64,000 nucleotides of DNA from Selaginella moellendorffii. Taxonomy: Eukaryota > Plantae > Lycopodiophyta. The translations under genes were made by a program, and so were the position numbers. How positions within the stretch are numbered: position 1 is the stretch's first letter; the number at the start of each line of letters is the position of its first letter. The notes beneath the pieces were generated by a model. That model was not told the origin of the DNA. It saw only the letters and a list, made by a program, of their open reading frames with translations, and ran no database searches. Location: assembly GCF_000143415.4 (NCBI RefSeq), contig NW_003314294.1, positions 367,402 to 431,401 of the forward strand. The letters run 5' to 3'. This document shows positions 11,288-57,956 of the stretch, piece by piece.

Positions 11288-12469
11288 TGTAGCACATGTG
11301 ATTATGGGATGAGATTTGGATATACTGTCACCGTGGATCCTTGGAACCTTGGGGGATAAATGGGGATAAAATAGCCACTAAGGGCTCTCTCATCAAGCAA
11401 TTGCCCCTTTTCCAGTTGGCTTAAGGGGAGAGAGATAAGGTGCGCTACAGTTGGTATCGGAGCAAATGGCATGGGTTCGATTCCCATTGATTAGTGGCTA
11501 CTTAAAAGTATAATATACCCTTGAGCAAGGTATATTCCTACCCCTAAATTTGAAATCGTACGTATTGGGCATCCATGCATACGTCCTTCCTCTTGTGTGG
11601 AGTATCCACGGACGAAGGTATCCACCGTGGGACTGCGGTACGGGTGGATGACTATCTCACGAGGGCGTGAACTTGCAGGGAAGCGTGGTGGATTGTAAGC
11701 AACCAAAGGGAATAGCTTCCGTTCACGAGGGCATGAACTTGCAGGGAAGCGTGGTGGATTGTAAGCAACCAAAGGGAACGACTCGAGAGACGATCCATTG
11801 GGGTTCAAATATAAAGGGAAAGGGCCCATGAATAAGAGTGCACCCCCTTTTCCAATCGGTTAAGGGTCTTGAGATATTTGGGTTTAAGCGTCTTTGGGCT
11901 TGAATAGTACTGGGCTAGGTGACCTCCCGGGAAGTCCACCGAAGGTATCCACCGTGGGACTGCGGTACGGGTGGATGACTAGTTGCCTCACATGGAATAG
12001 CTGGTCTACACAATGAAAGGATTGGTAGATTGAGTGTGGAAATGGAGGTGCTGGTTCCCCTTGGCTCAGTAGGGGTTGTTAGTCAATAGTCAATGAGGAC
12101 ATTGACATCTCTGAAGGGGGGGTGAATGTAGCGCATGTGATCATGGGATGAGATTTGGATATATTGTTACCGTGGATCCTTGGAACCTTGGGGGATAAAT
12201 GGGGATAAAATAACCACTAAGGGCTCTCTCATCAAGCAATTGCCCCTTTTCCAGTTGGCTTAAGGGGAGAGAGATAAGGTGCGCTACAGAGAAGAAAGTG
12301 GGGTGAGTGTAGCGCATGTGATCATGGGATGAGATTTGGATATATTGTTACCGTGGATCCTTGGAACCTTGGGGGATAAATGGGGATAAAATAGCCACTA
12401 AGGGCTTTCTCATCAAGCAATTGCCCCTTTTCCAGTTGGCTTAAGGGGAGAGAGATAAGGTGCGCTACA
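11288..12469 (+). mobile_element. Young TRIM with 162-bp LTRs, a captured 5S-bearing LTR and an extra tandem 3' LTR
   Basis: LTRs TGTAGC..GCTACA at 11288-11449, 12127-12288 and 12308-12469. PBS TGGTATCGGAGC (tRNA-iMet type) at 11452 and PPT GAAGGGGGGGTGAA before 12127. TSD GAGAA lies before LTR1 and after both LTR2 and LTR3. No retroelement ORF inside. Confidence 0.9.
11881..11937 (+). promoter_or_regulatory. 5S rRNA-derived Pol III internal control region (A-box, IE, C-box) within a Cassandra-like LTR fragment
   Basis: GGTTTAAGCGTCTTTGGGCTTGAATAGTACTGGGCTAGGTGACCTCCCGGGAAGTCC is colinear with plant 5S rRNA AGTTAAGCGTGCTTGGGCGAGAGTAGTACTAGGATGGGTGACCTCCTGGGAAGTCC (consensus recalled from memory). 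Confidence 0.85.
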
Positions 12470-30231: not shown

Positions 30232-32149
30232 TCTGGGCGTCTCGCGCCAAATATAGAAATATCAACGGAACAGCTTTTTTGGTTGCCGGTTCGAATCCAT
30301 TCAGCGGTTTCCTCTTTCTTTCAGTGTAACTCAGTGTCGTGATAGTTTTGATTTGCAACGCTCTGAAACTGTTCGATTTTGCGAGGAGTTTGCAGAGAGA
30401 TTATCATTCATCATACTACTAACTCCTCCATATTCGTAAAGTATTGCACCATCAGCTTCCCCTGGACGTCCAGCCAATGCATGTCCCTTATTTTAAATCA
30501 TTGTCATGTGAAGCTATCAATCATCCCGGCACGACAGCAGTTACTCTATAGAACGAGGTTGATTTTTGCCAGAAAGATTATTTTCCCTTGTGGTTCTCTA
30601 ACAGAAAATTGGATTATCGCCCTTCTGCTGTTGTTACTAGCAGTCTTTCAAGTGATAAGAACTCCTCAGAATCACCCATCTACAGCTGCTGTGGTGTCTC
30701 ACACTAAGTCAACTTGCAATTCCGTCATGTTCCATAGGGAGAAAAGGAAGTGCCTGTATTAAGCCTTAAAAGGTAATTAACCCCACTGAGATTGCAAAAG
30801 GATTTTGGAATTGTTTTTTATCTAAAATATTATCAATACAATAGAATTAGTGATGGATATGGTTAACCATATCCATCACATAGCAGAGGAGAGGAGGTGC
30901 CTTCGTGGCATAAGCTCTAGACTAAGCTCTAGTGGCCAGAACTATTATGTTGTTCCTATTGAGATTATTCTTTGCCCAAAAGTTGCATGTAGGAAAAGTT
31001 CTCTCCAAAAACTTTGTTGTAAGCAACAAGCTGAGAGGAGCACGTCAATGCCAAGTAGTAGGGAATAGGATATCCGGATGTCCTCAACAAGGATATTCTC
31101 TACTATCTTTGCTGGTTTTCTTTAAAGAAATTTTGGGGGAAGGTAGGCCTGACAAAAAAATGTAATAGCCTACAAGATATATAAATTTAAAATATATGTG
31201 TGCTTGATATAAAGGATATGATTGACCAGAAATTAGTATACAACTGGGTGAAATTGTTAGCTCGATTCCCCCAACTGCTGGATATTGTTGCAGCTCCAAG
31301 ATTAATTATATTGAACTTTGTTGGATCAAGGAAAACAATAATAGAACTTAATATTAAATCTGTATTATTCAAATAGCCATTCAAAAGAATATATTACAAA
31401 TAAAAATCATGAGATAACCCAAAACTTACAAAAATATATCTATTTTAATATAATTCTCTTAATATTTTAGGCTCCAAGAAATAATTTTATTTATGAAAAA
31501 AAAATATTTCTGGTGAAAATATTTATGTGAATTTATATACTTGCATCTTAAAGCATTAGTATAATATATCAACATGATTTTATTTATAAGTTTTTCAATT
31601 TTAAGTATTGTTGAAGATGTTGTTTGCCCACCATATGCACCTCCTCCAGGAATTGTAAGATGAATTTATAAGTTCTAATAGTGATTTTATGAAACATCTT
31701 GGTATTATTTTCAACACGCTTTTGGATGGCACTAGTATTAAAAATGAAATGAAATAAAATATAAAGAAATCAGTGGTGTTTCAGTATGTAACCAAACCTT
31801 ATATCGTTTGAATCAATGCCATAGTTGTTTAGAGAATCTACACAAAGAGATTATATTAGTTGCTCCATATTCAAAAGAAGCACAATTATGTAGTGCTAAC
31901 AATTTATGTTATTTTTGCTATCAAAAATATTCATTTTCCGAAATAGAAATAATAAATTATTTTTGCAATTTTAATTTGGAAGGTTCAAATTCTTTTAATG
32001 ATATTATTAAAAAGTAAATATTTTAAATAATGTGTTGCACATTGTATATAACAATTTTGGTTTGCTTACTAATAGTACTATTCTTGTTTAGTATCATTAT
32101 TAATCTCCTTAACCTATAAATAATTCAATTAAGAATTCTAAAACTACTA

Positions 32150-33460
32150 GAAGAGAAGTTGATTATGAAGACAAATATTCTAGGCATAAACACAAACCAC
32201 ATTTTTCTTCAATAATTTATGCTAAATCTAGTTTATATATAGGAACAAATGGTTTGGATAAAACCAATCCAATGCTAATAACTGTTTTAATTGTACATTT
32301 AGACTTTATATCATCTCCTCCTCTTGAAAAGATAGAAGACAATTAAAGTTTTTATGTTGATAGGCCAGGATCTTAAGGAATATTAAGAGGAGGCACAAGT
32401 GGATCCATAAGTGGTGCAACTTGTTCTTAATCCTTTTATATGAAATGTTTCAGCTGTTACATATTCATAATTTCTAGAGGATCAAATGTCATACTAAACT
32501 TTATAAATTTACAGTTTAATTTGCCAGAACACTTGATATAATCCATTCCACCAAAGAAGCCATTAAGACAAATCACATATTGTAAAATTCGAAAAAAGAA
32601 CTAATACTAAATCATCTATTTTGTACTCTGCAAGTGGATAATAATGAGAATTGTAACACTATTGTTATCCCATTTGTATGCAGCCTAAGTGTTTAGAGAT
32701 TTCACTCGAATTAGTGGAAGAATGGTTATTAAATATTAATCCTAAAATGTAATATCAGGAGCTCATAACAATTATGAAGGTAAACTTAACTTTGTTAACA
32801 ATATAGAATCATGAATATATAAGATTTTTTATGGTAAAGTACCAATTAAAACTTTACACCCCCATGATATACAAATATTAAAAAAATGGTAGATAACCAT
32901 CCTAATCCAAATACTAAAAGTTCATATATTTTGCAATCATCCCTTAAAGGTCTAAACAAATTATTTTACCAAACCATCTATTTATAGATGATAAACACTT
33001 GCTAAAATATGGCATATCTCCAATTGAGATGTCAAAATATAAAATGCATTAACTATAACACAAGACCATTATTTGTTCAGTTCCAACTATATTAATTGCA
33101 CCAATTGTTACTCCAAAGTCACCAGAGGAGGACCAAGAAGCCACTATAATACTTTGCAATAAATATGAAAAAAAAGAGAGGAAAAGTAAAAGAGAAGAAA
33201 TAAAAAAGTTATAGAAACAAAAGTGATTTAAACATTGTAAGAGTTAGATCTAAAAAAAAAAACAAATCGAAGCATTCTTCAAGAACAATTAAGATTGCCC
33301 CTCATCTTATAGAATATAGAAATATACATATCTAATTAGCCCAAAAACTTTATGTTATATGTAGGAGTGAGTGGTTTAGATTGAAACCAATTTAATAACT
33401 ATTAAAATCTCACTATGCTAATAAATATATAAAATCATAGTTATACATTTGGACCTAATA
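32150..33460 (-). mobile_element. Internally deleted gypsy relic, same family as 5941-10842
   Basis: 32310-33070 matches the integrase end/PPT region 6070-6770; 33090-33460 matches the 5' UTR/LTR region 10470-10850. Confidence 0.75.
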
Positions 33461-34944
33461 ATGTTTATAATTATAAATAAAAGATTAATCTAAATGAATA
33501 ACAACTGCTAAATGGTAGAATATCCCAAAATATCTAAAAACTTATTCTAAGTATAGTTTTCTTAAGGAAACTAAAATAATTTCTTCAACAACACTTGGTT
33601 TGCTTTGGAAAACTTTTATTATTAATGATAGCACTTTTACTTATATGACTTATAAAATTATAAATTAATGATTTTAATAATTATATTATTTGAATAATAA
33701 TATTTATATATAAAATCCTAAGAATAATAATACAATTTATTTTGAACTACATTATTTTATTTTAAGTAAATAAAAATTAAAATAGATGAATTCCAAATAT
33801 GAAAAAATATTTTATTTAAAGTAGTATTTAAAATATTATTTAATTAATTAATCTATTAAGATCCTAACTCCCTAGTTAGACTATATCAGCTTGTATAGAA
33901 GATTTTGGAGCAATCTTGACGTGAAGAATCTTTTCAACAAATTATAAACAATACTATTATCTTATGGAGTATAATAATTTTTTGTGGCAATTTTTCATAT
34001 ATATTGTGATGATGATTATTATCTTTTGTTGTTATGCAATCTTCAACTATATAGTTAATTAGAGCTTTATGCATTACTTATGGATGCAAATTCTTTATGA
34101 CAGAAGCTCTAGACTAAGCTCTAATGGCTAAAAATATTATATGGTTTCTATTGAAATTATTTTGATTCTACCTAGGAATTATTTGTCTAAAGAGTCAGCT
34201 CTAAGGATTATGTTGTAAACCTCAGCCAGGAATTGGAAAGGTAAAGGCCAAAGTCTGGGTATATTAATTTTCCCATCACATTGGTGGGAGAAAGTTAAAA
34301 GCCTAAAGCTACTTATATACCTAGCTCATGTTAAAGATAAATTCTTAATGAACCTAGGATGGTAAATAAGGTTGATAAATAATTATATTAATTTTAAACC
34401 AATAAATCAAAGAAAGTTGAAGAGAAAATCACAACTATTAGATTAAATAAATATCTTAAAATATGCTTAAATGTTCTAGATATATTCCTTATACCCTTTT
34501 CTAAAGTAAACAATCAATAGCCATAAAACTTGAAATAAAATCAAAACTAATAAAAAATATTAACTGATAAAATTTAAACCATTCATAAGAATATTTAAAT
34601 TATATTGTTTTCCATTTGAAAAATGTGAATAAACAATATGCATCAACTATTGATGAATTATTAGTTGAAACCAAACCATCATACTACAAACAGTTTCATG
34701 GTGTGTGGATCTTATTCTAGTTCATACTTAATAATAGTTTTGCAGCCAAACTTATAAACATTGATGTTCAATAAAGCTTATTTCTAAGTATCTATAATTA
34801 ACATTTATAAGGAATCACTTCTACTCCAGCTACTCCAATTACCAATATTAGCCATTGATCACATTATAAGATTTAATTTTTAACCATAAAATGTAATATT
34901 TTAAGGATATTTTTAAACACTCAGCAATAACAAACTTAATAATT

Positions 34945-35540
34945 TGTTGTGTTGCATGCAACAACACTTCATTTGCTTAATAACAGTGTCATTGAAATTG
35001 ATCAGTAATTATAAACATGTTTATAATTTATAAATCAAGATTAATTTTATTTCATATTAACCACTAAATGGTAGAATAAAAAAAATATATTAGGAAGTGT
35101 TTAGGAAAGTTTATAAATTATAAGTACAAGATTAATCTAAATGAATAACAACCATTAAATGGTAGAATATCCTAAAATATTCAGGCATATTCTAGGTTTA
35201 TTCATTACCATCTCAACCCTCTATAGGTTTTTCTTAAGCAAACCAAAAAGTTAAAAATAATATTTGGTATAAACCAAGAATAAAATCAAATATTATAATA
35301 AATTGTTATGCCTTGCATATAGCAACACTTGATTGCTTAATAGTAGTGTTATTTTTACTTATTAATCCAATTGATCAAATAAAATTTATATTTATAAGCA
35401 TATTTGTAATTTATAAATACAAGATTAATCTTATTGCATATCAACCATTAAATTATAGAATAAAAACCGCTAAATGGTAAAATATTCTAAAATATTCAAA
35501 TATATTTTAGGCATATCCCTACAAGTTTGCTCAAAAACTG
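34945..35540. repeat. AT-rich dispersed repeat, two tandem units
   Basis: Same blocks as 12780-13085, repeated twice. Confidence 0.65.
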
Positions 35541-35696: not shown

Positions 35697-36853
35697 TCAC
35701 TGCCGTGATCTCTTTCTCTTGGTTGCATCCTCCCATGCATGGAGCACGTAGTCGATTATATCTTGCAATCCTACACCGTGCTTCACCTGGAAGCCAAGGT
35801 TACACACTAGTTCTCGTGGAGAAAATCGAGAAAAGAAAGCTCGACATTGATTTACCTGTGCAAAGACGAATGGACCACCGTCACGCATTCTCAACGCGTC
35901 CCGTTCCATCACTTTCAAATCCGCTCCAACAGCCTGCGCTAGATCCGTTTTGTTGATAACCTGTGCGTTTTCTTCAGTCGAGAGTGGAGCGAGCAAAATG
36001 AAAAGTAACTTACAAGGAGATCGGCTTGCGTGATACCAGGCCCGCCTTTGCGAGGAATTTTGTCGCCCCCAGAGACATCGATAATATAGATGATGTAGTC
36101 GGCTAGTTCCCTGCTGAAGTTTGCCGCGAGGTTATCTGCAAACAAGAAACGAGTTAGTTGCGGTAGAAAACAGTGTTATACCTCCTCCGGATTCGCACAA
36201 AAGTATGTCAGCCGAGAACTTCGTCGAGAGTTCTTCCAGTGGTCCCAAATTAATGCTGATGTCTTCTCGAATTGCAGCGTGGGGGCATCCACCAGTTTCG
36301 ACAGCTCGAATTCGTTCGGGGGCAAGAGCACCGTTTTTAACCAGAAACTCGGCATCCTCTCGTGTAAAAATGTCGTTTGTAACCTGCACGAACCAAGATC
36401 TCTATTTTGCTTTTGACTTCAAAGGGGCTCACTTACGGCTGCGATGCTGTATTTATCTCGCAAGGCCTGGCAAAGAGCAAGCATTAGAGCTGTCTTCCTG
36501 CAAGTCAAAACAAGAAGCAAGCGAAAGTGAGTCAAATTCACAGCAAAAAAGAGGAAAAATGTCACAGACCCTGTTCCAACCGGTCCTCCGATCCCGACAG
36601 TAAAAGCGCGCTCCTCAAAGTTGCGAGATTGCAGAGGCAAAGGTCGCCGTTTGAAGTAGCCAGGAGAATCGAGCTGCTCGTGCGTGTGAGGAGCCAAACC
36701 ATCATGGGAGTGGTAGAGCTTTCCATCCGGACCCTTCCACTCGTTGGCCCTGAAAGAAGAAACGAAAAAGGTTGGCTGCTAGACCCCAAAGAAACACACA
36801 TACCCATGAGCTTCGCCGTAATCGTGATCGTGGTGGTGATGGTGCTCCGCCAT
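35697..36853 (-). CDS. UREG: Urease accessory protein G
   Basis: His-rich N-terminus MAEHHHHDHD, P-loop GIGGPVGTG|[26 protein letters not shown]|[20 protein letters not shown]|VINKTD. Multi-exon. Confidence 0.97.
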
Positions 36854-37367
36854 AGTTGATCTTTTCCTCCCTCTTCTAACAGCCGAGCCGTCGATTTAAT
36901 TTTTTCCGATCGTATCGGTCAAATCAACTTAGAATAGTGGCTGTTTGCCTCGTGGAACTTCAGCGTCGGTTATGCTGCCTGCCTGTAGCATCAAACCACG
37001 ACCACCAATTACGTCGCAATCCAATCGCTCGAGAAACTCGATGAATTACCTCGATCAGCCTGCTGTGATTGAAAGCTTCCAGTATCACATTTTTAAAGAT
37101 TCCTGCGATGCGAAGCTGTCAATCATCCCACCTCCAACAAACTCTGCAGCTCTCATTTACCAATAATCACAGAGCTCCTTCTTAACCCGGCATGGCAGCA
37201 CCTCGATCGATAATCCTTCTCGCAAGGATCAACCTCGTGCTCCGTTAGTGCTATGGTTCTGTAGCCAAGAAAGGAAAGCACCTGTGTTAGTATATAAACC
37301 ACGCGGCATGAAGAGCTTCATCCAACCTCTTTTTGTTCCTTGTGCGCGTTTTTTCTCTTTCGCAAAG

Positions 37368-37742
37368 ATGTGGAAGACGACGACGATCGCTCTCTTGCTG
37401 GTTTTCGCGGCGCTTCAGGCTGAAACGACGAGTAAGCTCAAGTCTTTCTCCCTCCATCCTGTTATTGTTTTCTAAATCTTTCTGGTATCTACAGCCGTTG
37501 TGTATCCGTCCTTGTATCACAGGAAGTTGCTAGAGCAGCAGCCTGGCCAGCCAATCTCGCCGTTTCGGTCCGTTCCATCTGGTCCCGACGACCCTTTGCA
37601 CTACCACCGCCGTCGTGGACACAACGAGTGCGTAGCGAGCGAAGCAAGCGCCTGTTCATCTTCTTCTACTGCGCCAACCGTCGAAAAACCTTTTGCTAGT
37701 GCTGCTACTGCTACTACTACCACTGCCACTGATGGTCCATAA
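37368..37742 (+). CDS. CLE-like secreted peptide precursor (2 exons)
   Basis: TATATAAA at ~37291. Exon 1 is the signal peptide MWKTTTIALLLVFAALQAETT. The phase-1 intron 37432-37494 joins in frame to exon 2, which has RKLL and the CLV3-like motif RSVPSGPDDPLHY. Confidence 0.8.
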
Positions 37743-38022: not shown

Positions 38023-38286
38023 TCAGTCGCAAAATTGCTTGGGCTTGACGATGCTAACGCCGCTGACGCTCGAGCTCTTGAGCATTTCCAGCTGCTTGCA
38101 GCCCTTGTTGAGCAGGTACTCGATCTGGGTGAAATTCTTGCGCTCGATGCCTACCGCATTCCTTCGGAACTCGGCGCTCACGATCGCCTCCATCTCGCGC
38201 CGCGCCTCCGGCGCCTTGCTGCGGGCGACGCGGAGGAAGCTCCGGTAGAGACTGAGGACCTGACGCTGGAGCCCCGAGAGCTTCAT
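38023..38286 (-). CDS. SDHAF1: LYR-motif protein, succinate dehydrogenase assembly factor 1
   Basis: MKLSGLQRQVLSLYRSFLR..EFRRNA..RKNFTQIEYLLNKGCKQLEML. Confidence 0.9.
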   Translation of the reverse strand: MKLSGLQRQVLSLYRSFLRVARSKAPEARREMEAIVSAEFRRNAVGIERKNFTQIEYLLNKGCKQLEMLKSSSVSGVSIVKPKQFCD

Positions 38287-38408
38287 CACTGAAGAGCCCT
38301 AAATCTCTAGGGCTAGGTTAGCAAATTCAAAGCGATTGAATTCCCGCCATATTTAGAGGGCTTGCCAAAAGTCGTTTTGAATTAAAGGAACGCCCTAATT
38401 CTTTGGGG

Positions 38409-40337
38409 CTAAGATTCATAGCAGCAGAGATTGGAGAGCATCACGTATGGCGCGGACAGCCCACGCGTTAGAGGGCTCTCCGCCTCCATGGCGTTCTTGG
38501 CAGCCATGGCAGCCTTCTCCAAGCTCTCGTGGTAATTGGGCGCGCCCAGCAAGGCCGCCCACGTCTCCGCATCCGGCGCAAAAGGCATTGCCGCGATGAG
38601 TTCCTCCGCGTCGCGGATCCGCCCCGCTCGCGCGAGCGCATTGATAATGCACGAGTAGTGGTTCTTCGAGTGCGCCAATCCGTGTGCCGCGATCGCCAGC
38701 CCAAATTCGCGCAGCCCCTGCTCTCCCGCGTGGCCGCGCGCGGCTAGAACGCTCAGCAGCGTGATCTCGTCGGGCCGGAAGCCCTCTAGCGCCATGGATT
38801 CCACCAGCGCGATCGCTGACGCTGGATCTCCCGCCTGGGAGTATGCCGCGACGATCGAATTCCAGGATACGATGCTCTTGATCGGCATCGCATCGAAGAG
38901 CTCTCGCGCGCGATCCAAATGCCCTAGCTGGGCGTGCATGCTCAACAAGCACGTCCACGCCACCACGCCCCTCTCGGGCATCCTCTGGAATATCCCGTGC
39001 GAGCGGGGTATATTCCCGGCCGAGGAATATCCTTGGAGGATCGTGTTCCACGAGACATCGTCCCACTTGGGCATATTCTCGAACGTGGCATCGGCACCTT
39101 CCAGCTGGCCGTTTCGGGAGTAGAGAGCCACCATTGCGTTGTGCGAGACGATGTCTCTGTGGGGCATTGTCTCGAAGAGAATCTTTCCAGTGTGGAGATT
39201 CCCAGACTCGGCATATGCCGTAATCAGTGTGTTCCAGGAGATTACGTCCCAGCGTGGCATCCGGTCGAACATCTGCTGCGCATTCTGGAAGTGGAATTTT
39301 TCAGTGAATCCAGCCAGCATTGCGTTCCAGCTGATGGGATCTCTTCCATCCATCTCGTCGAAAATCTGCTTCGCCGATTCTGTGTCGCTCCTGTGGAACA
39401 ATGCCCGGATCATGAGCGTTGATGAAATTGTGTCTTTCTGCGGCATTGACTCAAACATGGATTGAGCTTTGTCCATCTCTCCGGTTTCAACGTGGCCAGA
39501 GAGAATGGCAGAAAATGTGATTGCATCCCTCTCTGGAATCCTGTTGAAGACATCGTAGGCTTCCTTGAGATTTCTGTGGTCTGAATAAGCTTGGATCATC
39601 GTGTTCCAAGAAACTAGGGTTTTCTCAGGCATCCAATCAAACAAGTTCTTAACATCATCCAAATGCCCAATTCCGGCATTCACTGCTATCATCTCGTTAC
39701 AAGAGACAACATTCCACTCTGGCATTTTTACAGCGACTTCTTTGGCTTCAAGTAACAACCTACTGTGATTTACTCCAGATACTGTGTTTCGAGAAGTGAT
39801 ATTCACCGAGGATGCCTGATTAAACACTTGGATTGTATCCTCCATTTTACCGCTTTGGGTAAATGCGGCAACAAGGATGATCCAAGAGAGTACGTTTCTT
39901 TCTGGCATTGAATCAAACAATTCCTTAGCTTCAACGTGATTTCCGTGGTGTGCATAGACAGTTATCATCGCATTGAAAGTTACCAGATCCCTCTTTGGCA
40001 TAGCATCAAACATGTTTCTCGCGGATTCCAGATGCCCATTCTGGGCATATGCGTGGATCATGAGGCTCCACGAGTATAGATTAAGTTGGCGGATGCCTAT
40101 GAATGCCTGGGACGCATCCTCCACGCTTCCAAGCCTTCCGTACACCTGGATCATCGTGTTCGCAAGAAACCTATTGTCGCAGTGATCGCTGTGGAGGATA
40201 TGGGCGTGGAGGCGCTTGGCATCGGCATAGTTTTTGCATTCTTTGAGGAGCTTGTGGAATCGGTCCTGCCCACGCAGCGCATTCATATCATTCGATGGAA
40301 TCGCCGGGGACGGAGCTCCAGCCCACCAAGGATTCAT
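38409..40337 (-). CDS. PLS-class PPR protein (SS-motif array, E domain)
   Basis: Intronless ORF of about 31-aa repeats (FD.MP..D.VSWN.MI.AY) ending HYSCIINALARAG..YVMLSNL. The start is either 40337 or 40286. Confidence 0.9.
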   Translation of the reverse strand: MNPWWAGAPSPAIPSNDMNALRGQDRFHKLLKECKNYADAKRLHAHILHSDHCDNRFLANTMIQVYGRLGSVEDASQAFIGIRQLNLYSWSLMIHAYAQNGHLESARNMFDAMPKRDLVTFNAMITVYAHHGNHVEAKELFDSMPERNVLSWIILVAAFTQSGKMEDTIQVFNQASSVNITSRNTVSGVNHSRLLLEAKEVAVKMPEWNVVSCNEMIAVNAGIGHLDDVKNLFDWMPEKTLVSWNTMIQAYSDHRNLKEAYDVFNRIPERDAITFSAILSGHVETGEMDKAQSMFESMPQKDTISSTLMIRALFHRSDTESAKQIFDEMDGRDPISWNAMLAGFTEKFHFQNAQQMFDRMPRWDVISWNTLITAYAESGNLHTGKILFETMPHRDIVSHNAMVALYSRNGQLEGADATFENMPKWDDVSWNTILQGYSSAGNIPRSHGIFQRMPERGVVAWTCLLSMHAQLGHLDRARELFDAMPIKSIVSWNSIVAAYSQAGDPASAIALVESMALEGFRPDEITLLSVLAARGHAGEQGLREFGLAIAAHGLAHSKNHYSCIINALARAGRIRDAEELIAAMPFAPDAETWAALLGAPNYHESLEKAAMAAKNAMEAESPLTRGLSAPYVMLSNLCCYES

Positions 40338-42565
40338 TCGCCAGGATCATCAAGTCTTGCGCCATCGCTGGGAATCTCACCCAGGGACGGCGAATTCACT
40401 CTCAGATTCTTAAGAGCAGGCACTCTAGCGACACGTTTCTAGCGAATCTCTTGGTGCAAATGTATGGGAAATGCGGGAGTGTTGACGATGCAGCGAAGGT
40501 TTTCGAGCGGATCAAGCGCCCTAACTCTTTTTCCTGGAGCATTATGATTCAAGCATATGCCCAAAACGGGCATCTTGCTCAAGCACAAGCTTTGTTTGAT
40601 CGAATGCCGGAAAAAAACCTGGAATCTTGGAATGCATTGATTACTGCTTATGCCAGATCTGGTAAACTGGAGAAAGCCCAAGAGATTTTTGACAGCATGC
40701 CTGTGAAGAACACCGTCACCATCAATGCGATGCTCTCCGCATATGCCTCAAACGGGCATATTGGCGATGCTTGGAATCTTTTCGAGACCATGGAGCATCG
40801 CGACCGAATATCCTGGAACACAATGCTTCAGGGATTTTCTCTCAGTGGTCAGCTTGCAAAATTAAAGGATCTTTTTGATGATATGCCATCTGCAGATGTA
40901 GTTTCATGGACTTGTGTGATTACAGCATATGCCCAACATGGGCATTTGGAATATGCCCGTGCCATGTTTGATGCGGCGCCCGTAAGGAACGAGGTCACCT
41001 GGAACTCCATGATCACTGCGTACGGAGAGAATGCCGATGTTTCGGAAGCAAAAGCTTTGTTTGATTCAATGCCAAATCCAAATGTTGTGTCGTGGAACGC
41101 TCTCGTCCAAGCCTATGTCAATGCAGATGATCTCCAAGGAGCAAAGGTGGTGTTTGATCGAATTCCGGAACCGAATGTTATTTCGTGGACCACCATTCTT
41201 GCTGCTTATGCCCAAAGCGGCCAACTTGAGAAAGCGAAGAGAATTTTCGAAGATATGCCGCAAAAGAACGTTGTTTCCTGGACTGTTATGCTCTCTGCTT
41301 ATGCCGAAAACGGGCATTTACGAGATGCGGAGATTCTCTTCGAGCATATACCACAAAAGAACAATCTGACTTGGAACTCAATGTTGCTGGCTTACGTCCA
41401 AAGAGGTGATATAGAGATGGCGAAGAGATTCTTTGACAAGATTCCTTCTCCATGTACAATAGCCTGGAACACAATGCTTCAAGTGTTTATCCAGCTTGGA
41501 AATCTGGACGAAGCTTTGGCTTTCTTTGAGCATATTCCCGATAAAAACTCCACGTCATGGACAACTATGATTCTTGCTCTCGCGAAGAATGGTCGAATAG
41601 ATGAAGCAAAAGATATGTTTGTAAAGTCACTACCTCTCTACGATCTTGTGTCTTGGACTGCATTGCTTGGCGGCTATGCTCAAACTTGCGATGGATTTGT
41701 GGAGGAGGCCAAAACAACCTTTGAAGCTATGCCAGAATGGGATATGGTAACGTGGAACACTATGGTCTCGGTTTATGGCTTGAACAATCGCCTAGAAAAT
41801 GCTAGAGCCTTGTTTGATTCCATGCCAGCATGGGATATAGTTACATGGAACACACTGCTTTCTATCTATGCCCAATCTGGATATAGCGAAGAATGTAAAA
41901 ACCTCTTTGAAAGTATGCCATTCTTAACAGCGATATCTGTAAATGCAATGATATTGGGGTGTGATTCTCTCCAGGAGTCCAAGAGTTACTTTGATACGTG
42001 CATACCTCCTGGAGAGAGGGATATTCTTTGCTGGAGTTCTATGATGCTTGCATATACCCGGGCTGGGCATATACTCAGAGCCAAGAGAATGTTTGATGGG
42101 ATGCCCGAAAAGGACTTGGTGGTGTGGAATATGATGGTGGAGGCGTATGGACAAGGTGGTCATGGAGACAACGCTGTGGAAGTGTTTAGAAAAATGGAGG
42201 TGGAGGGCATCAAGCCTGACAAGATTGCTTATGTGAGTGTCTTGGCAGCTTGCGGCCATGGAGGTCTTTTGGATGAGGCTTGTGCGAATTTCTCCAACAT
42301 GAGCGATGCGCATGGATATGTTCCTGAGGATCAGCATTTGTGTTGCTTGGTGGATGTTCTTGGGAGGACCGGGAAGTTGAAAGAGGCCGAGGAGTTGATC
42401 GAGGCTATGCCGTGTGAGATTGGATCCGTGGCCTGGGAGTGCTTGCTTGGAGCTTGTAAAATCTATAAGAATGCCGAGCATGGGCAAAAGGCAGTCCAGA
42501 AGATTGGAGCTTTGATACCAGAGAAGGCCACTTTGTACTTGTCTATTGAGGCTATATCCCAATAA
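40295..42565 (+). CDS. PLS-class PPR protein (SS-motif array, E domain)
   Basis: 756-aa intronless ORF with a long array of 31-aa repeats, ending HLCCLVDVLGRTG..WECLLGAC. Confidence 0.92.
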   Translation: MESPGTELQPTKDSFARIIKSCAIAGNLTQGRRIHSQILKSRHSSDTFLANLLVQMYGKCGSVDDAAKVFERIKRPNSFSWSIMIQAYAQNGHLAQAQALFDRMPEKNLESWNALITAYARSGKLEKAQEIFDSMPVKNTVTINAMLSAYASNGHIGDAWNLFETMEHRDRISWNTMLQGFSLSGQLAKLKDLFDDMPSADVVSWTCVITAYAQHGHLEYARAMFDAAPVRNEVTWNSMITAYGENADVSEAKALFDSMPNPNVVSWNALVQAYVNADDLQGAKVVFDRIPEPNVISWTTILAAYAQSGQLEKAKRIFEDMPQKNVVSWTVMLSAYAENGHLRDAEILFEHIPQKNNLTWNSMLLAYVQRGDIEMAKRFFDKIPSPCTIAWNTMLQVFIQLGNLDEALAFFEHIPDKNSTSWTTMILALAKNGRIDEAKDMFVKSLPLYDLVSWTALLGGYAQTCDGFVEEAKTTFEAMPEWDMVTWNTMVSVYGLNNRLENARALFDSMPAWDIVTWNTLLSIYAQSGYSEECKNLFESMPFLTAISVNAMILGCDSLQESKSYFDTCIPPGERDILCWSSMMLAYTRAGHILRAKRMFDGMPEKDLVVWNMMVEAYGQGGHGDNAVEVFRKMEVEGIKPDKIAYVSVLAACGHGGLLDEACANFSNMSDAHGYVPEDQHLCCLVDVLGRTGKLKEAEELIEAMPCEIGSVAWECLLGACKIYKNAEHGQKAVQKIGALIPEKATLYLSIEAISQ

Positions 42566-42620
42566 AAAGACCCTCGCGAGCGTCAACTCCAAATCGAAAA
42601 CTTGTAAATGAAGACGAACC

Positions 42621-45600
42621 TCATTTTACGGCTTCAGCCAAAGAGTTAAACTTTGATCCTTTGTCACGCAAGAGCGCCTGTGGATCACCTTGTTCTACCT
42701 GTAATGTAAACGCCATTCATGCTTTCCTAAAAAGTCTATTGCTTCACGTACCAGTCGGCCTCGGTCCAGGACGAGAACTCTCTGGAGATCAGAGATAGTT
42801 GAAAGGCGATGGGCAATTGTGACCACCGTAACGTCTTGGCATTCGTGCGCGATGGTTCTCTTTAAAAGGCGGGTTGTCTCCGGATCCACATTTGCCGTGC
42901 ATTCGTCCAAGCATAAGATCTGTAGCGAAAGTTCGTTATATTGGAGCAAACAAGACCAGGAGCTGGCTTACACGAGAGCGCTTGAGAAGCGAACGAGCAA
43001 GGCAGAGAAGTTGTCGCTGGCCTACAGAGAAGCTCTCGCCACATTCTCGTACTTGAGTATCCAGTCCCGCGGACTCCACTGCAGGCTTAAGGTGGCACTT
43101 TGCTATCATCTCCCAGAGCACGCAATCGCTGGCCTGTCCTGTTGGATCCAAGTTCTCCCTGACAACAGCAACATGTTAGAACTTTCCAGCCAGCACGTAG
43201 AAAAGCATCCTACCTCACTGTTCCTTCAAACAGGAAAGGACTTTGAGGAACGACCGAGAGGCTTTCTCGGAGTTGATGGAGGATGAGTTTTGAGATGTCA
43301 AAGCCATCTATAATGATTCTGCCAAAACTTATAGGCCTCAGTCGAAAGAGCGCACAAAGGATGCTGGATTTTCCTGCACCTGTTCTTCCTGCGATGCCTA
43401 CCTGCGGTATCATCAGCTTCAACGACAGGCTCTGGAAGTTTTTAATACCTTCTCTCCTGCAGCGATTTTGAAGGAGATGTTGCTCAGGGCGGGAGGTAAT
43501 TCAGGACGATACACGAGCTTTACGTTTTCAAACTCCACTTCTCCATTCTCTGGCCAGTTCTCGGGAAGATGGACATCTTCTAGTTCTTGATTGTCACCCT
43601 TTTCTGGAACTTCTATGTCGATCATTAGATACTGTAAGCATTATGTTAGAAGACAGGTTTTATAAAACTCACGAACCTGTTGCACACGCTCAACTGACAC
43701 CATCTCTTTCTCGGTCTCGGAAAATGCAGTGAGAAGATTGTTGAGAAGGGAAATAACTGGCGCAGCGTATGACAATGCCAAACCAATCTGTGTGGATCTC
43801 ACAAGAGAAACAAAGATGACAAAACTTCTTTCGCGTTTCATTACTATATACCAAACCAGCAGTCGTTGAGTTGATAAGTAGATCTTTGTCACGGCTCAGA
43901 ACAGCCATCATGCTCACGAAAAAGACTAGAAACGCTGCCATTATCTGCAAGCAAGCTAAAAACTGTCAGCCTTGGTAAACTCACAACGGAGCTGTAGCAC
44001 CTGGAGCCGAATGGACAGCCACAAGCTTGCTGCGATTTCAGAGAAAGACGCCCGCTGATTCGCTTCGACAAAAGTAACGTTTTGTGCCAAGAACATATCC
44101 TGGAAATGTATGAAGATTAACAACACCAAATGTGGATGAAAACCATCACAAACCTGTCGTTGAAATGCTCGGATGGTCGAGGCACCGTCTAGAGCTTCAC
44201 TGAATGACGCATATATTGGGGACCGGGACACGCTATCAAGCCGCCGCAGCTCACGAGACGTTTCTCGGTAGAATCTCTGCATTTTTTTTATGGTTTATTC
44301 TTCACGGTAAGAAAACCACCCAAGAGCGAACCTGAATCCTGAAATATATAAAACCGAGAGGTATAAGAAGCACCACGATTTCCCACTGAAAAAGAAACAA
44401 CGTAAGCCAGATTAAGATACCAGCCTGAAACTTACTTGGACAAGGCAGAGAACAATGAGAATTCCCAGAAGGCTGAAGCAATGCGCAAGTAATATATTCG
44501 CAATAAAAGGAAGGGAATCATCAATTGTATACAAATCCGAAGAAAACCTGCAATGACTATTGAGGCTTTGCAAATATAACACTCTTTACCTGTTAAGGAT
44601 GCGTCCAACGGGGTTCTTCTCGAAAAACAAAATCGACGCTCGAAGGATATTGTTTAGCAGAGTTTCATGCACTTGGAATGCTGCACGTAAACCTCCGCAT
44701 GCGAATGAAAATGCCCGCAGCAGAGTGAACAAGGAATTGAGACCACCTATAACAAAAAGAATTTTCTGCACAGTCGACGATCCATTCGTGGTCAAAGCAC
44801 AAAAAGAATGAACAACCCACCAAGTAAAACTTCACAGAATGATGATGATCATTACTTGAAGTTTTGTCAACCCAGTGAGCCAGCCACCAGTCGTTTCCAT
44901 TCTTTGTTGCCTGCATCAAGCTTGTACTAGCAACTGTTATTGCTAAGATGGAACAACCAGTAAAAACCGCATAAGTCCTGCACATTAAGCACGGATTAAC
45001 ACCAATATCAAGCACGGACGAAACAAGGGAGAGAATTAACCTGTAAACAGTTGCCTTTACTCGTCCATGATCTCGAGCTTCTTCCTCCACCAGAGAGAAA
45101 GATTTCGCTTCTCGATCGTTGCCGCAAAGCGTACGATCCTCATATGGCGTTACCTCTGTATCAACCTCGATCTCTGACTGGTTATTATCGGAGTTTAAGT
45201 GCTTGCACGGTGTGCTTGTAATACACTTTGCATGCCCGTTTTCCACGAGAACTACAATGTCAGCAAGCGATGCTGCCTGAGATATCAAACACATATCAGA
45301 TTAAACAAAGAAAAACAAACAAATCATCAACCTGGTGATGGTGTGTGCATAAAACTCGAGTCTTGTCGCGTAACAAAGGCCCTTGAATCGCGTGATGCAT
45401 AAGCCAGGCAGCTACATGTGGATCAACAGCGCTGAGCGGATCGTCAAGCAAGTAGATGTCACAATCTTGATAAATCGCCCTGTGGCCACGGCAGTTCGTA
45501 AAGCGCTGCAATTGTACCAGAAAAAAGATTCTCACCTTGCAAGTGCCAAGCGAGCCTTTTGTCCACCGGATAGATTGCATCCTCGTTCGCCTATCTCACT

Positions 45601-47860
45601 CAAATCTTTCTTGTGCATGAGTTCCACGTCAAAATCAAGAGAGCACGCTCTTACAACCTGATCGTATCTGCAAAATAATTGCAGTTCGAAGCTTTCACAA
45701 GAACAAGTTACCCACCTGTCTTCGACATAGAGCCGTCCAAAAAGAATATTTTCCCGCAGAGATCCAGATCTTATCCATGGGGTCTGCAAGGAGTGGACAC
45801 CAGGTGTTAAATCACCAAAAGAGATCTGTTTCGATTGGACCTGTGAAACAAATGCAGTAGAACCTGAGACATAGACAGAATCCCGTTCACAATTCATCTC
45901 GTTTAAGATTGCGTGAAGAAGGGAACTCTTCCCAGATCCCACCTGCATCAACTTGTTATACAGAGGAAGCCCTGCGACGTAACTTACTTGGCCGAGAACG
46001 ACCACCAGTGATCCTTTTGGAATATCGAGTGAGATCCTTTTCAGAGTCGGCAAAGAAGAAGACCAGCTAAAGTCCATCTCAGACACCTTTAAGGCCGTAT
46101 TGCGGTCCATCTCAGGCGTGGTTCGAGAAAAAGTTTGTGAGGAATCGGGAGAGCTCAAAAAGCGTTGCAGCCTCTGAATAGACACCCATGCCTGGTTTTC
46201 TTTCATCGTCAAGGCGTGAAGAGAACGCAAAACAAATCAAGCAGCTTACCTCTACGATTCCAGTAATAACCCATGGAAAAGAGTTCAGTGGAGATATTAA
46301 AATGTTGAAAAGAGCAAGGCTGGTGAACACCTGAGCAGAGAAATACAGTCAGTCAGTCAGCTTTTGATAGTTACCGTGGCTGCATCCAGAGTATGTCCTA
46401 GGAACGTAAACAATCCAAACGTAAGGACCGAGAATAAAGTCGGTGTGCAGGCCCAGAAATAAACGCATAGAGCATCCAAGTATTTACGCGTCTGCAGGAA
46501 AAGACTGAAAGTTTAATTGATATCTTCGCAAGGCCAGACACTTACGGACAAGTGCTTCATTTCCTCGTTTCTGACTGTCCTGATTTTGTGAGCAAAAAAC
46601 GTTTCCCAGGCATACATCTTCACAGTCCAAATGTGAGTCAAAAGCTCACTTGTTCTCCGGATCCTGATATCCATGGAAGATTAAACAAGAACTTTTAAAA
46701 CATTTACAAGTCACCTCTCGTCTTTCTGAGCCATCATAAAAGTGTTTGCTTCACCAATTTTCACAGCTATCCATCGGTTCACTGCGTACCGAATTGTTAA
46801 CTTCGTCAAACGAAACCAGAACAGAAATTACCCGGTATGAGAAGGATAACCACGGCAAGCCCCGCTAAAAAGGAGTACTTGACTTGCATGTAAAGCATAC
46901 ACAAGGCCACAACTATCTGCAATGGAAGACTAGCCTTTAAAACGTTAATTCTAGCTCGTGAAAGAACACAAATGCTTACCTCCACAAGTCATGCACACTT
47001 GAAAAGAGATTAATCGTCCTGTCGGCATCTACAGACATCAGCGTTTGGATTTCTCCAGTGGAAAAAGAGTTGCGCTGAGCAACACGTATGCTCAAAGCCT
47101 GTGGATCTTTCACTCAGACAGTATCCAAGACAATTTAAGTCGAGCCTACCTTGCGATAGACAATTGTTGTTAATCCTGCCTTTAACTTTAGCCTCAGCCT
47201 TGCTACTAGAAAACTGTAGTGCGTTCCCATAAATCCTCTAGCAACAAAGCAAATTAGCTGCGCAAACCAACCAAACAAGCAATTCTACCTCAACAGCGAA
47301 ATACCTCCGATTCCACAAGCATACCAATAGCCACGTCCATGGCTGGTATGTTTACCTTTAAATCAACACCTTAAAACACAAATAGATCTCAAGGAGAACA
47401 AGCTCACCAGATTGCAGATACTTCATTATTGCATTGAGAAACAATGGGCCCGAGAAACTGAGGCAGTCATTGACAACCTGCAAATACTTGTTTTTTCAGT
47501 AAGTAGAGAATTGGTAGTCAAACCTTCAACAGTCCGATGAAGAAAAAACTCCATCCATAAGACCGGAAGATCGCCCAGAACAGCGACTTGTTTTCTGATT
47601 CTAAACAAGCTTCCCACAGTCGATCGCGGCATACTTCTGGATCGAGGTCCCCGGGCAATGGAAATAAATCGTCTTGGCAAAGTTGCTTGCCAGAACCAGC
47701 ATTCATGAGAGGATTCACCCATGAAAACGTTAGTGTGCTCCAGATCGAGGCACTCTAAAAAGGAGATGAAGTTTTAGAAGGAAAAGATCCTTGAGACAAG
47801 CACACCTGAGATGACGATGAAGCAGACTGTAGCAGAGGCTCTCTCTCTCCCTGTTTGAAG
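42621..47860 (-). CDS. ABCC13: ABC transporter C family, ABCC13/MRP7-like; many exons, 5' end unresolved
   Basis: Lasso [17 protein letters not shown]1: GQ|[34 protein letters not shown]2: [27 protein letters not shown]2: [31 protein letters not shown]. Stop TGA at 42623-42621. Confidence 0.88.
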
Positions 47861-57325: not shown

Positions 57326-57956
57326 TGTAAGCTCCTGAATTTGGACTTTCTGGGAGGTCACTTAACTTAGTATTATTTAAACCCAAGGACACCTAACCCC
57401 AAATATTTCAAGACCCTTAATCAATTGAAAAAGAGGGCGCACACTCTTGTTCATAAGCCCTTTCCCTCTATATTTGAACCTTTATAAATCGAAACTATAG
57501 CTCTTCTGAAAGCCCCGCTCTCTTGACACCCTACCCCTTGGGTCGAGCCCAACTTGAGCAAACTAAACCTATCAAATGTTAATTAATATGTGGTGTAATT
57601 CTCCTAAGCCAATTAACAGAGTTGGACTTGAGACCTCTGCAATTCTCAATCAATATATGGTGTGATTCTCCTAAGCTAATTAATAGAGTTGGACTTGAGA
57701 CCTCTACAATTCTCTTAGGCCAACTAACAGAGTTGGACTTGAGACATCTTTAATACCAAATGTAATCTCCTGAATTTGGACTTCTTGGGAAGTCACCCAC
57801 CCTAGTATTATTCAAACCCAAGGACGCTTAACCCAAATATCCCAAGACCCTTAATCAATTGGAAAATGAGGTGCACACTCTTATTCATAGGCCCTTTCTT
57901 TTTATATTTGAACTTTTATGGATTGTTTTTCGAGTAATTCCTTTTGGTTACTTACA
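57326..57956 (-). mobile_element. Full-length Cassandra-like TRIM (631 bp)
   Basis: 5' LTR 57956-57761 (TG..CA), PBS-like TGGTATTAAAG at 57758, short internal region with tandem repeats, PPT AAGGGGTAGGG at 57539-57529, 3' LTR 57528-57326 and perfect TSD CATTA. Both LTRs carry the 5S segment. Confidence 0.9.

What the first reader, a model, noticed from the sequence alone, without database searches (positions are those of the whole stretch)
37368..37742. CLE-like peptide gene with a 13-residue motif (extra Asp) and a long C-terminal tail
Seen: the gene only appears after splicing: signal peptide, RKLL, then RSVPSGPDDPLHY (37566-37604), HRRR and a ~40-aa Cys/Ser/Thr-rich tail. Known: CLV3 is RTVPSGPDPLHH, the 12-residue length is nearly invariant, and the receptor clamps both peptide ends. 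Inference: the duplicated GAC codon shifts the C-terminal register, giving a variant ligand, an antagonist, or a ligand for a co-evolved receptor. Fixed-length motif searches would likely miss it.
Basis: partly seen in the sequence, partly recalled or inferred. Interest (0 to 1): 0.7.

Follow-up and report, generated by a model that had tools for sequence, protein, structure and literature searches.

The report
Spikemoss CLE-like gene, extra Asp
This is a real, already annotated but uncharacterised small secreted-protein gene of the spikemoss Selaginella moellendorffii. Its CLV3-type peptide-hormone motif is one aspartate longer than normal and ends in tyrosine, and nothing yet shows that it is expressed, conserved or active.

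Summary
Window 37368-37742 (+) is a two-exon gene with a 63-nt phase-1 intron. It encodes a 103-aa precursor: signal peptide, RKLL, RSVPSGPDDPLHY (37566-37604, GACGAC at 37587-37592), HRRR, and a 41-aa tail.

The tail is Ala/Thr/Ser-rich with only two Cys, so it is not Cys-rich.

The spliced product is exactly RefSeq XP_024537968.1, an 'uncharacterized protein' of Selaginella moellendorffii. The second haplotype scaffold carries an allele (XP_002964993.1, SELMODRAFT_406665) with the same motif, so the extra codon is not a single-scaffold error.

The gene is absent from the published SmCLE1-15 motif list and from a fixed-length CLE catalogue.

No relative turned up in an exhaustive search of 1.84 billion proteins, a word search, or a metagenome scan.

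The two haplotypes differ by 6 nonsynonymous and 3 synonymous changes (pN/pS 0.69; neighbouring genes 0-0.29). None alters the motif block, but this is not statistically significant.

The scan met this gene before, on the other haplotype (s1-408488, same verdict). Unchecked scan notes also describe 13-residue 'GP[DE]DP...QY' CLE variants in SmCLE7 relatives, which this motif resembles.

Verdict: a CLE-derived length variant of unknown activity, of modest interest.

The parts
37291..37298 (+). TATA-like box (TATATAAA), 70 nt upstream of the ATG
   Evidence: Read directly. TATATAA is kept in the other haplotype (alignment A1). Promoter function is inferred, not tested.
37368..37431 (+). Exon 1 (coding part): start codon, signal peptide and three Thr
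   Evidence: Identical to the N-terminus of RefSeq XP_024537968.1 (P0007).
37368..37421 (+). Predicted signal peptide, residues 1-18: Lys3 n-region, hydrophobic core I7-L16, likely cleavage after LQA
   Evidence: Kyte-Doolittle 9-residue means of 1.3-3.1 over residues 7-14. UniProt names the allele D8R128 'Secreted protein'. No dedicated signal-peptide predictor was available.
37432..37494 (+). Intron, 63 nt, phase 1, GTAAGC...TACAG
   Evidence: One substitution between haplotypes, with both splice sites kept. Retaining the intron gives a stop at 37473-75.
37495..37742 (+). Exon 2: variable region, CLE-like motif, basic site, tail, and stop TAA at 37740-42
   Evidence: Its translation finds SELMODRAFT_406665 at E=1e-42.
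37521..37532 (+). RKLL in the variable region. Similar R-K/R-x-L strings occur in SmCLE5 and Sm408679.
   Evidence: sequences of Sm411648 and Sm408679 in the PMC7552357 supplement. A role as a processing site is inference only.
37566..37604 (+). 13-residue CLE-like motif RSVPSGPDDPLHY
   Evidence: Identical in both haplotypes. Ten of the 12 positions match SmCLE9/10/11 RLVPSGPDPLHH, plus one inserted residue.
37587..37592 (+). GAC GAC, the tandem Asp codons; one of them is the extra residue
37605..37616 (+). His followed by Arg-Arg-Arg, a probable C-terminal processing and trimming site
   Evidence: One synonymous difference between haplotypes (codon 61). Processing is inferred from the basic residue that follows the 12-mer in other CLE precursors.
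37617..37739 (+). 41-residue Ala/Thr/Ser-rich tail (A9, T8, S7, C2)
   Evidence: The Atlas model of the allele is disordered (pLDDT 0.52, pTM 0.17).

Best explanation
This is a native Selaginella moellendorffii gene (RefSeq LOC112348875; the allele on the other haplotype is LOC9633624 / SELMODRAFT_406665). It encodes a 103-residue secreted prepropeptide derived from the R-type, CLV3/SmCLE9-11-like branch of the CLE peptide-hormone family.

Shown: the gene model, the signal-peptide-like N-terminus, the motif with one extra Asp between Asp8 and Pro9 and Tyr in place of His/Asn12, and its presence in two roughly 3% divergent haplotypes.

Inferred: the precursor enters the secretory pathway, is cut before Arg1, and is trimmed back through the HRRR stretch. 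This would give a 13- or 14-residue peptide, RSVPSGPDDPLHY(H), probably hydroxylated or arabinosylated on the PSGP prolines as CLV3 is.

The N-terminal eight residues are canonical, so they could occupy the N-terminal site and the Gly6-Pro7 kink pocket of a CLV1/BAM-type receptor. The Pro-Leu-His-x end is displaced by one residue. The most likely outcome on canonical receptors is weakened agonism or binding without activation. Real signalling would need a receptor that tolerates the longer C-terminal half.
For: - Gene model and motif. The motif is far beyond chance.
- Exact identity of the spliced product to RefSeq XP_024537968.1; the allele is XP_002964993.1 / UniProt D8R128 'Secreted protein'.
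- Both haplotypes keep the ORF, both splice sites, TATATAA and the identical 27-residue block PGQPISPF-RSVPSGPDDPLHY-HRRRGH. All 6 amino-acid differences lie outside that block.
- The gene lies between the same cobW-domain and LYR genes on both scaffolds, so it is native and syntenic.
- The motif matches SmCLE9/10/11 RLVPSGPDPLHH at 10 of 12 positions.
- TDR-TDIF structure: a common Gly6-Hyp7 kink pocket, plus read-out of both peptide ends (PMC4979064).
- CLV3 structure-activity work: Pro9Ala abolishes activity, Asp8Gly leaves about 1%, Pro9 is needed for activity but not for binding, and Arg1, His11 and His12 are read by CLV1 (PMC3023850).
Against: - No evidence of expression.
- No orthologue or paralogue beyond the allele: exhaustive phmmer of 1.84 billion representatives, word searches of 5.8 billion clusters, and a metagenome scan.
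- pN/pS between haplotypes is 0.69, against 0.00, 0.26 and 0.29 for three neighbouring genes, which suggests weak constraint.
- The clean motif block (P about 0.16), the absence of indels (P about 0.3) and the absence of stops (P about 0.66) are all compatible with neutrality (my estimates).
- The insertion sits at the Asp8-Pro9 junction, the most activity-sensitive spot, and position 12 is Tyr rather than the His/Asn that define the family.
Confidence: 0.55

Rival explanations
1. Decaying or neutral CLE paralogue. The one-codon insertion and the His12-to-Tyr change inactivated the ligand. The ORF is still intact only because too little time has passed, and the gene does nothing.
For: - pN/pS of 0.69, well above three neighbouring genes.
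- No orthologues or paralogues found.
- No transcript evidence available.
- The insertion is at the Asp8-Pro9 position, where small changes reduce CLV3 activity about 100-fold.
- An earlier follow-up on the other haplotype also found no evidence of expression (s1-408488; unchecked).
Against: - The ORF, signal peptide, both splice sites, TATA-like box and whole motif block are intact in two haplotypes with pS of about 0.04-0.06.
- High pN/pS outside the motif is normal for CLE precursors, whose variable regions evolve fast (established knowledge of the family).
- NCBI's annotation pipeline models the gene on both scaffolds.
Confidence: 0.3
2. Member of a lycophyte class of one-residue-longer CLE-derived peptides (pattern GP[DE]DP...x[QH]Y) that also occurs in SmCLE7 and its relatives. 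The class is kept by selection and read by its own or a relaxed receptor, so the 13-residue length is a family trait and not a one-off slip.
For: - Scan notes s1-346898, s1-420840, s1-408353 and s1-351364 describe conserved 13-residue 'GP[DE]DP'/'DPxQY' motifs in SmCLE7 relatives, one of them reported as expressed.
- The motif here contains GPDDP and ends DPLHY, so it fits that pattern apart from His for Gln.
Against: - Those notes are unchecked AI notes and I could not fetch their sequences, so no alignment was made.
- No protein of 57-180 aa shared enough 5-residue words with residues 30-70 to become a candidate, so any likeness is confined to a few residues.
- This motif is otherwise much closer to canonical SmCLE9-11 than that pattern implies, so independent origin by codon slippage is equally possible.
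Confidence: 0.12
3. Sequencing or assembly artefact, or a mis-annotated ORF.
For: None found. Both scaffolds come from one Sanger assembly of one plant.
Against: - The same GACGAC lies in two scaffolds that differ by 9 substitutions in this CDS and about 3% around it.
- An in-frame 3-nt error arising twice is implausible.
- Signal peptide plus CLE motif in one spliced frame is far beyond chance.
Confidence: 0.03

Closest known systems
Arabidopsis CLV3 (mature 12-mer RTVPSGPDPLHH, 13-mer RTVPSGPDPLHHH)
   Same: Small secreted precursor. The gene has an intron, unlike most CLE genes. Arg1, Val3, Pro4, Ser5, Gly6, Pro7, Asp8, then Pro-Leu-His. An extra His follows the motif, and there is a C-terminal extension after the peptide.
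   Different: One extra Asp between Asp8 and Pro9. Tyr where CLV3 has His12. No similarity outside the motif. No expression, processing or receptor data.
Selaginella moellendorffii SmCLE9/10/11 (RLVPSGPDPLHH; e.g. Sm408679)
   Same: Same species and same R-type Asp8/His11 motif, identical at 10 of 12 positions. Basic residue(s) follow directly after the motif, and there is an R-[KR]-x-L-L string in the variable region.
   Different: Those are canonical 12-mers ending HH, with a 6-residue tail in Sm408679. This gene has a 13-residue motif ending HY and a 45-residue C-terminal part. It is not in the SmCLE1-15 list.
13-residue CLE-derived motifs of SmCLE7 and its relatives (scan notes only, pattern 'GP[DE]DP'/'DPxQY')
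   Same: Same genome. One residue longer than a CLE, an acidic residue inserted after position 8, and a C-terminal Tyr.
   Different: Known to me only from note titles. The sequences were not seen, so register and flanks are unverified. Here His precedes Tyr where that pattern has Gln, and the N-terminal half is fully canonical.
Synthetic MCLV3 analogues altered at Asp8-Pro9 (Kondo et al., PMC3023850)
   Same: Perturbation at the same dipeptide. Those analogues can keep receptor binding while losing activity, which is the behaviour proposed here as most likely on canonical receptors.
   Different: Those are substitutions in a 12-mer, not an insertion. They are synthetic. No natural counterpart or antagonism in planta was shown.

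Membership tests
CLE (CLV3/ESR-related) peptide precursors | N-terminal signal peptide on a small (about 60-250 aa) precursor | tested here: met
   103 aa. Lys3, hydrophobic core I7-L16, LQA|E. UniProt names the allele 'Secreted protein'. No dedicated predictor was run.
CLE (CLV3/ESR-related) peptide precursors | Conserved 12-residue CLE motif [RH]-x-V-P-x-G-P-[DN]-P-[LI]-H-[NH]; family peptides are 12-13 residues with C-terminal HN or HH (PMC8462819) | tested here: not met
   The strict 12-mer pattern finds nothing in the window. The motif matches only when one extra residue is allowed after position 8, and it ends HY. All other consensus positions are met (R1, V3, P4, G6, P7, D8, P, L, H).
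CLE (CLV3/ESR-related) peptide precursors | Sequence relatedness to known CLE precursors beyond the motif, or a family-model hit | tested here: inconclusive
   No Pfam family above threshold. phmmer against 1.84 billion representatives finds only itself. Lack of similarity outside the motif is usual for this family, so this neither supports nor excludes membership.
CLE (CLV3/ESR-related) peptide precursors | Listed in published CLE catalogues of the species | tested here: not met
   Absent from the SmCLE1-15 motifs (PMC6089843 supplement file 2) and from the 8 S. moellendorffii CLEs of PMC7552357. No paper holds the motif or the locus id.
CLE (CLV3/ESR-related) peptide precursors | Processed to a mature Hyp/arabinosylated 12-13-mer | not testable with these tools
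   Needs peptidomics. Only the PSGP context identical to CLV3 and the HRRR site can be read from the sequence.
CLE (CLV3/ESR-related) peptide precursors | Perceived by a subfamily XI LRR receptor kinase (CLV1/BAM/TDR type) | not testable with these tools
   No complex modelling or binding assay was available. The expectation rests on PMC4979064 and PMC3023850.
CLE (CLV3/ESR-related) peptide precursors | Expressed gene | not tested
The protein collection holds the proteins only on genome scaffolds.
13-residue CLE-derived motifs of SmCLE7 relatives (scan notes) | Motif one residue longer than a CLE, with GP[DE]DP and a DPxQY end | tested here: inconclusive
   The motif here has GPDDP and DPLHY. 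The comparison is with a pattern quoted in note titles only. The sequences had no reference that I could fetch, so no alignment was made.

The most novel reading that the evidence does not exclude
Selaginella keeps a small class of natural CLE peptides that are one residue longer (GP-[DE]-D-P-x-[HQ]-Y). This gene would be its most CLV3-like member. They would act as endogenous competitive modulators of CLV1/BAM signalling, or as ligands of a receptor with a re-spaced C-terminal pocket. Ligand length would then be an evolvable specificity determinant in the CLE system, one that fixed-length catalogues have hidden.
Probability: 0.12. Interest if true: 0.7.

Novelty: new variant of a known kind. 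Interest (0 to 1): 0.38.

Why it matters
CLE peptides control stem-cell pools in all land plants, and structures show the receptors reading the central kink and both ends of a 12-13-residue ligand.

A natural ligand with an internal one-residue insertion at the Asp8-Pro9 junction would be a ready-made probe of how much register shift these receptors tolerate. Synthetic work shows that binding and activation can be separated at this junction. Such a ligand would also test whether plants make their own CLE antagonists.

The gene also shows that 12-mer-window catalogues under-count the family in early-diverging vascular plants.

Without evidence of expression or conservation, it may equally be a dying paralogue, so the value at present is that of a cheap, well-defined hypothesis.

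Tried and rejected
- **Homologue searches.**
  - Exon-2 translation by reference and residues 30-70 of the database record P0007 found only the allele.
  - Exhaustive phmmer gave five further hits. All are long low-complexity proteins without any CLE-like motif and were rejected.
  - The metagenome scan found nothing.
- **Exon 1.** At 21 codons it is too short for the search tools.
- **Joined models.** I submitted no self-joined spliced model to any search. The full-length proteins searched were database records (P0001, P0007). Exons were joined only inside a script, to count codon differences.
- **Other protein tools.** Pfam gave only sub-threshold noise (VWA_N2, IMUP). The ESM Atlas gave no usable feature hits and a disordered model.
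- **Literature.** Miwa 2009 (PMC2688290) is not held. Supplements of PMC8462819 and PMC11771683 are not held. The SmCLE1-15 motifs came from PMC6089843 instead.
- **SmCLE7 relatives.** Full sequences of the SmCLE7 relatives, SmCLE5 and SmCLE9-11 had no reference and were not typed in, so I made no alignment with this gene and no test of the 13-residue-class idea.
- **Scans of the region.** The bacterial promoter/terminator scan is irrelevant and empty. Rfam found no hit in the window.
- **Readings rejected.**
  - A 12-mer read in a shifted register (SVPSGPDDPLHY or VPSGPDDPLHYH) puts no residue on its consensus position.
  - Tyr sulfation lacks the Asp-Tyr context of PSK, RGF and CIF.
  - A nematode or fungal CLE mimic, or contamination, is excluded because the gene is syntenic between plant genes on both haplotypes.

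Full report
**Organism and locus**

The translation of exon 2, given by reference, finds one protein in 5.8 billion clusters. It is SELMODRAFT_406665 of Selaginella moellendorffii (P0001, 103 aa, E=1e-42, 94% identity).

Its 90% cluster has one other member, P0007 = RefSeq XP_024537968.1, 'uncharacterized protein LOC112348875'. P0007 is encoded on scaffold GL377598.1 at 404769-405143 and is letter for letter the spliced product I derived from the window. P0001 (XP_002964993.1, EFJ33831.1, UniProt D8R128 'Secreted protein') lies on GL377570.1.

The two scaffolds are collinear. Both carry a cobW-domain gene, this gene, an LYR gene, two PPR genes and an ABC transporter. They are about 97% identical in genic DNA and about 85% identical in AT-rich stretches. 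They are therefore the two haplotypes of the sequenced plant.

**Checking the observation**

- Exon 1 is 37368-37431, with donor ACGA|GTAAGC.
- The intron is 63 nt, phase 1, at 37432-37494.
- Exon 2 is 37495-37742.

Without splicing, the exon-1 frame ends at 37473-75, and the nearby AG at 37521-22 is out of frame.

The motif RSVPSGPDDPLHY occupies 37566-37604, with GAC GAC at 37587-37592. It is followed by H-RRR (37605-37616) and a 41-residue tail. The tail has 9 Ala, 8 Thr, 7 Ser and only 2 Cys, so 'Cys-rich' is an overstatement.

The N-terminus has Lys3, a ten-residue hydrophobic core and LQA|E. A TATATAAA box lies 70 nt upstream of the ATG.

A relaxed CLE pattern that allows 12 or 13 residues is expected 3e-5 times in the six frames of the window. 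It occurred 0 times in 300 resamples and once in the real sequence.

**Is the extra codon real?**

The alignment of the two haplotypes (A1) shows GACGAC in both. The CDS differs at 9 sites, 6 nonsynonymous and 3 synonymous. The intron differs at one site. There are no indels in the CDS, whereas the 200 nt upstream hold a 3-nt and a 13-nt indel.

A single-scaffold sequencing error is therefore excluded, and the insertion predates the split of haplotypes with pS of about 0.04-0.06. Both haplotypes come from one plant, so this does not show fixation in the species.

**Is it under selection?**

The evidence is weak. pN/pS is 0.69, against 0.00 for the LYR gene and 0.26 and 0.29 for the two PPR genes next door. 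All six amino-acid changes fall outside the 27-residue block PGQPISPF-motif-HRRRGH.

With six changes, that has a chance probability of about 0.16. The absence of indels (about 0.3) and of new stops (about 0.66) is also unremarkable; these are my estimates. Fast-evolving variable regions are normal for CLE precursors, so the ratio alone does not prove decay.

**Relatives**

None was found apart from the allele.

- Exhaustive phmmer over 1.84 billion representatives gave five other hits, all long low-complexity proteins with no CLE-like motif.
- The word search restricted to residues 30-70 had a single candidate, the allele's cluster.
- A JGI metagenome scan gave nothing.
- Pfam and the ESM Atlas were uninformative, and the Atlas model is disordered, as expected for a propeptide.

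These tools cannot see canonical CLEs through a 12-residue motif. The blank says that no close orthologue of 45-180 aa is in the collections. It does not say that the gene is unrelated to CLEs.

**Comparison with known CLEs**

The SmCLE1-15 motifs listed in the Whitewoods 2018 supplement are all 12-mers. The closest, SmCLE9/10/11 (RLVPSGPDPLHH), matches this motif at 10 of 12 positions once one gap is allowed. The differences are the variable position 2 and His12-to-Tyr.

Against the CLV3 13-mer RTVPSGPDPLHHH, the local string RSVPSGPD-D-PLHYH differs by Thr2Ser, the inserted Asp and His12Tyr.

The gene is absent from that list and from the eight S. moellendorffii CLEs of Zhang 2020, which scores fixed 12-residue windows. 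No held paper contains the motif or the locus id.

Tails after the motif are not unusual. SmCLE5, SmCLE14 and Sm409888 carry 13, 23 and 67 residues.

By the strict family definition (12-13 residues ending HN or HH, PMC8462819) the motif fails on internal length and on the last residue. I therefore file it as a CLE-derived variant, not as a canonical member.

**How it probably works**

Shown: a secretory-type N-terminus, a canonical N-terminal CLE half including the PSGPD context that is hydroxylated and arabinosylated in CLV3, and basic residues after the motif as in other CLE precursors.

Inferred: secretion, cleavage before Arg1, trimming through RRR, and a 13- or 14-residue product.

Two published results bear on receptor fit. 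[quoted passage not shown] In CLV3 structure-activity work (PMC3023850):

- Pro9Ala abolishes activity.
- Asp8Gly leaves about 1%.
- Pro9 is needed for activity but not for binding.
- Arg1, His11 and His12 are the residues read by CLV1.

The insertion lies exactly between Asp8 and Pro9. It keeps both the Pro-Asp and Asp-Pro dipeptides but moves Pro-Leu-His one residue away from the kink. On a canonical receptor I therefore expect weak agonism or binding without activation. Real signalling would need a receptor that tolerates the longer C-terminal half. None of this was tested.

**Earlier notes of this scan**

Note s1-408488 is the same gene on the other haplotype. Its follow-up reached the same verdict: a real, annotated gene with an extra Asp and a Tyr end, and no evidence of expression, conservation or activity. 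My allele comparison agrees with and extends it.

Notes s1-346898, s1-420840, s1-408353 and s1-351364 report conserved 13-residue CLE variants of the type 'GP[DE]DP'/'DPxQY' in SmCLE7 and its relatives. The present GPDDPLHY fits that pattern except for His in place of Gln.

If those notes hold, the extra residue may be a family trait and not a private slip. I could not fetch those sequences, because they have no reference and I did not type them, so this stays an untested lead.

**Verdict**

This is a real gene and a real 13-residue CLE-derived motif, uncatalogued as a CLE but annotated as hypothetical, with unknown activity. The two live readings are a modified peptide signal (about 0.55, including the 13-residue-class version) and a decaying paralogue (about 0.3). 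Interest is modest until expression or conservation is shown.

Noticed in passing
window 38409-40286 (-) and 40295-42565 (+): Two intronless PPR-repeat genes (625 and 756 aa) lie head to head, with their start codons only 8 nt apart. The stored Pfam field showed '-' for both, but hmmscan gives PPR at E=1e-89 and 1e-133. pN/pS between haplotypes is 0.26 and 0.29.
   Followed up: partly
window 38023-38289 (-): Intronless Complex1_LYR (SDHAF1-like) gene, 280 nt from the stop of the CLE-like gene and convergent with it. From the Met on, the protein is identical in both haplotypes, with 3 synonymous changes.
   Followed up: partly
window about 31457-35218, versus L001 4394-8107: The AT-rich stretch (GC 25-35%) upstream of the cobW gene is only 85-87% identical between the two haplotypes and has many indels, against 97% in the genic part. 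This may be fast-decaying repeat DNA.
   Followed up: no
window 1-64000: No Rfam family reaches its gathering score anywhere in the window. That includes the places where first-reader notes propose Cassandra-like TRIMs with 5S rRNA promoter boxes (57326-57956 and 11288-12288).
   Followed up: no
window 35697-36853 (-) and about 42620-47768 (-): A cobW-domain gene lies divergent from the CLE-like gene (about 515 nt between the two start codons), and a full-size ABC transporter lies further downstream. Both are syntenic on the other haplotype.
   Followed up: no
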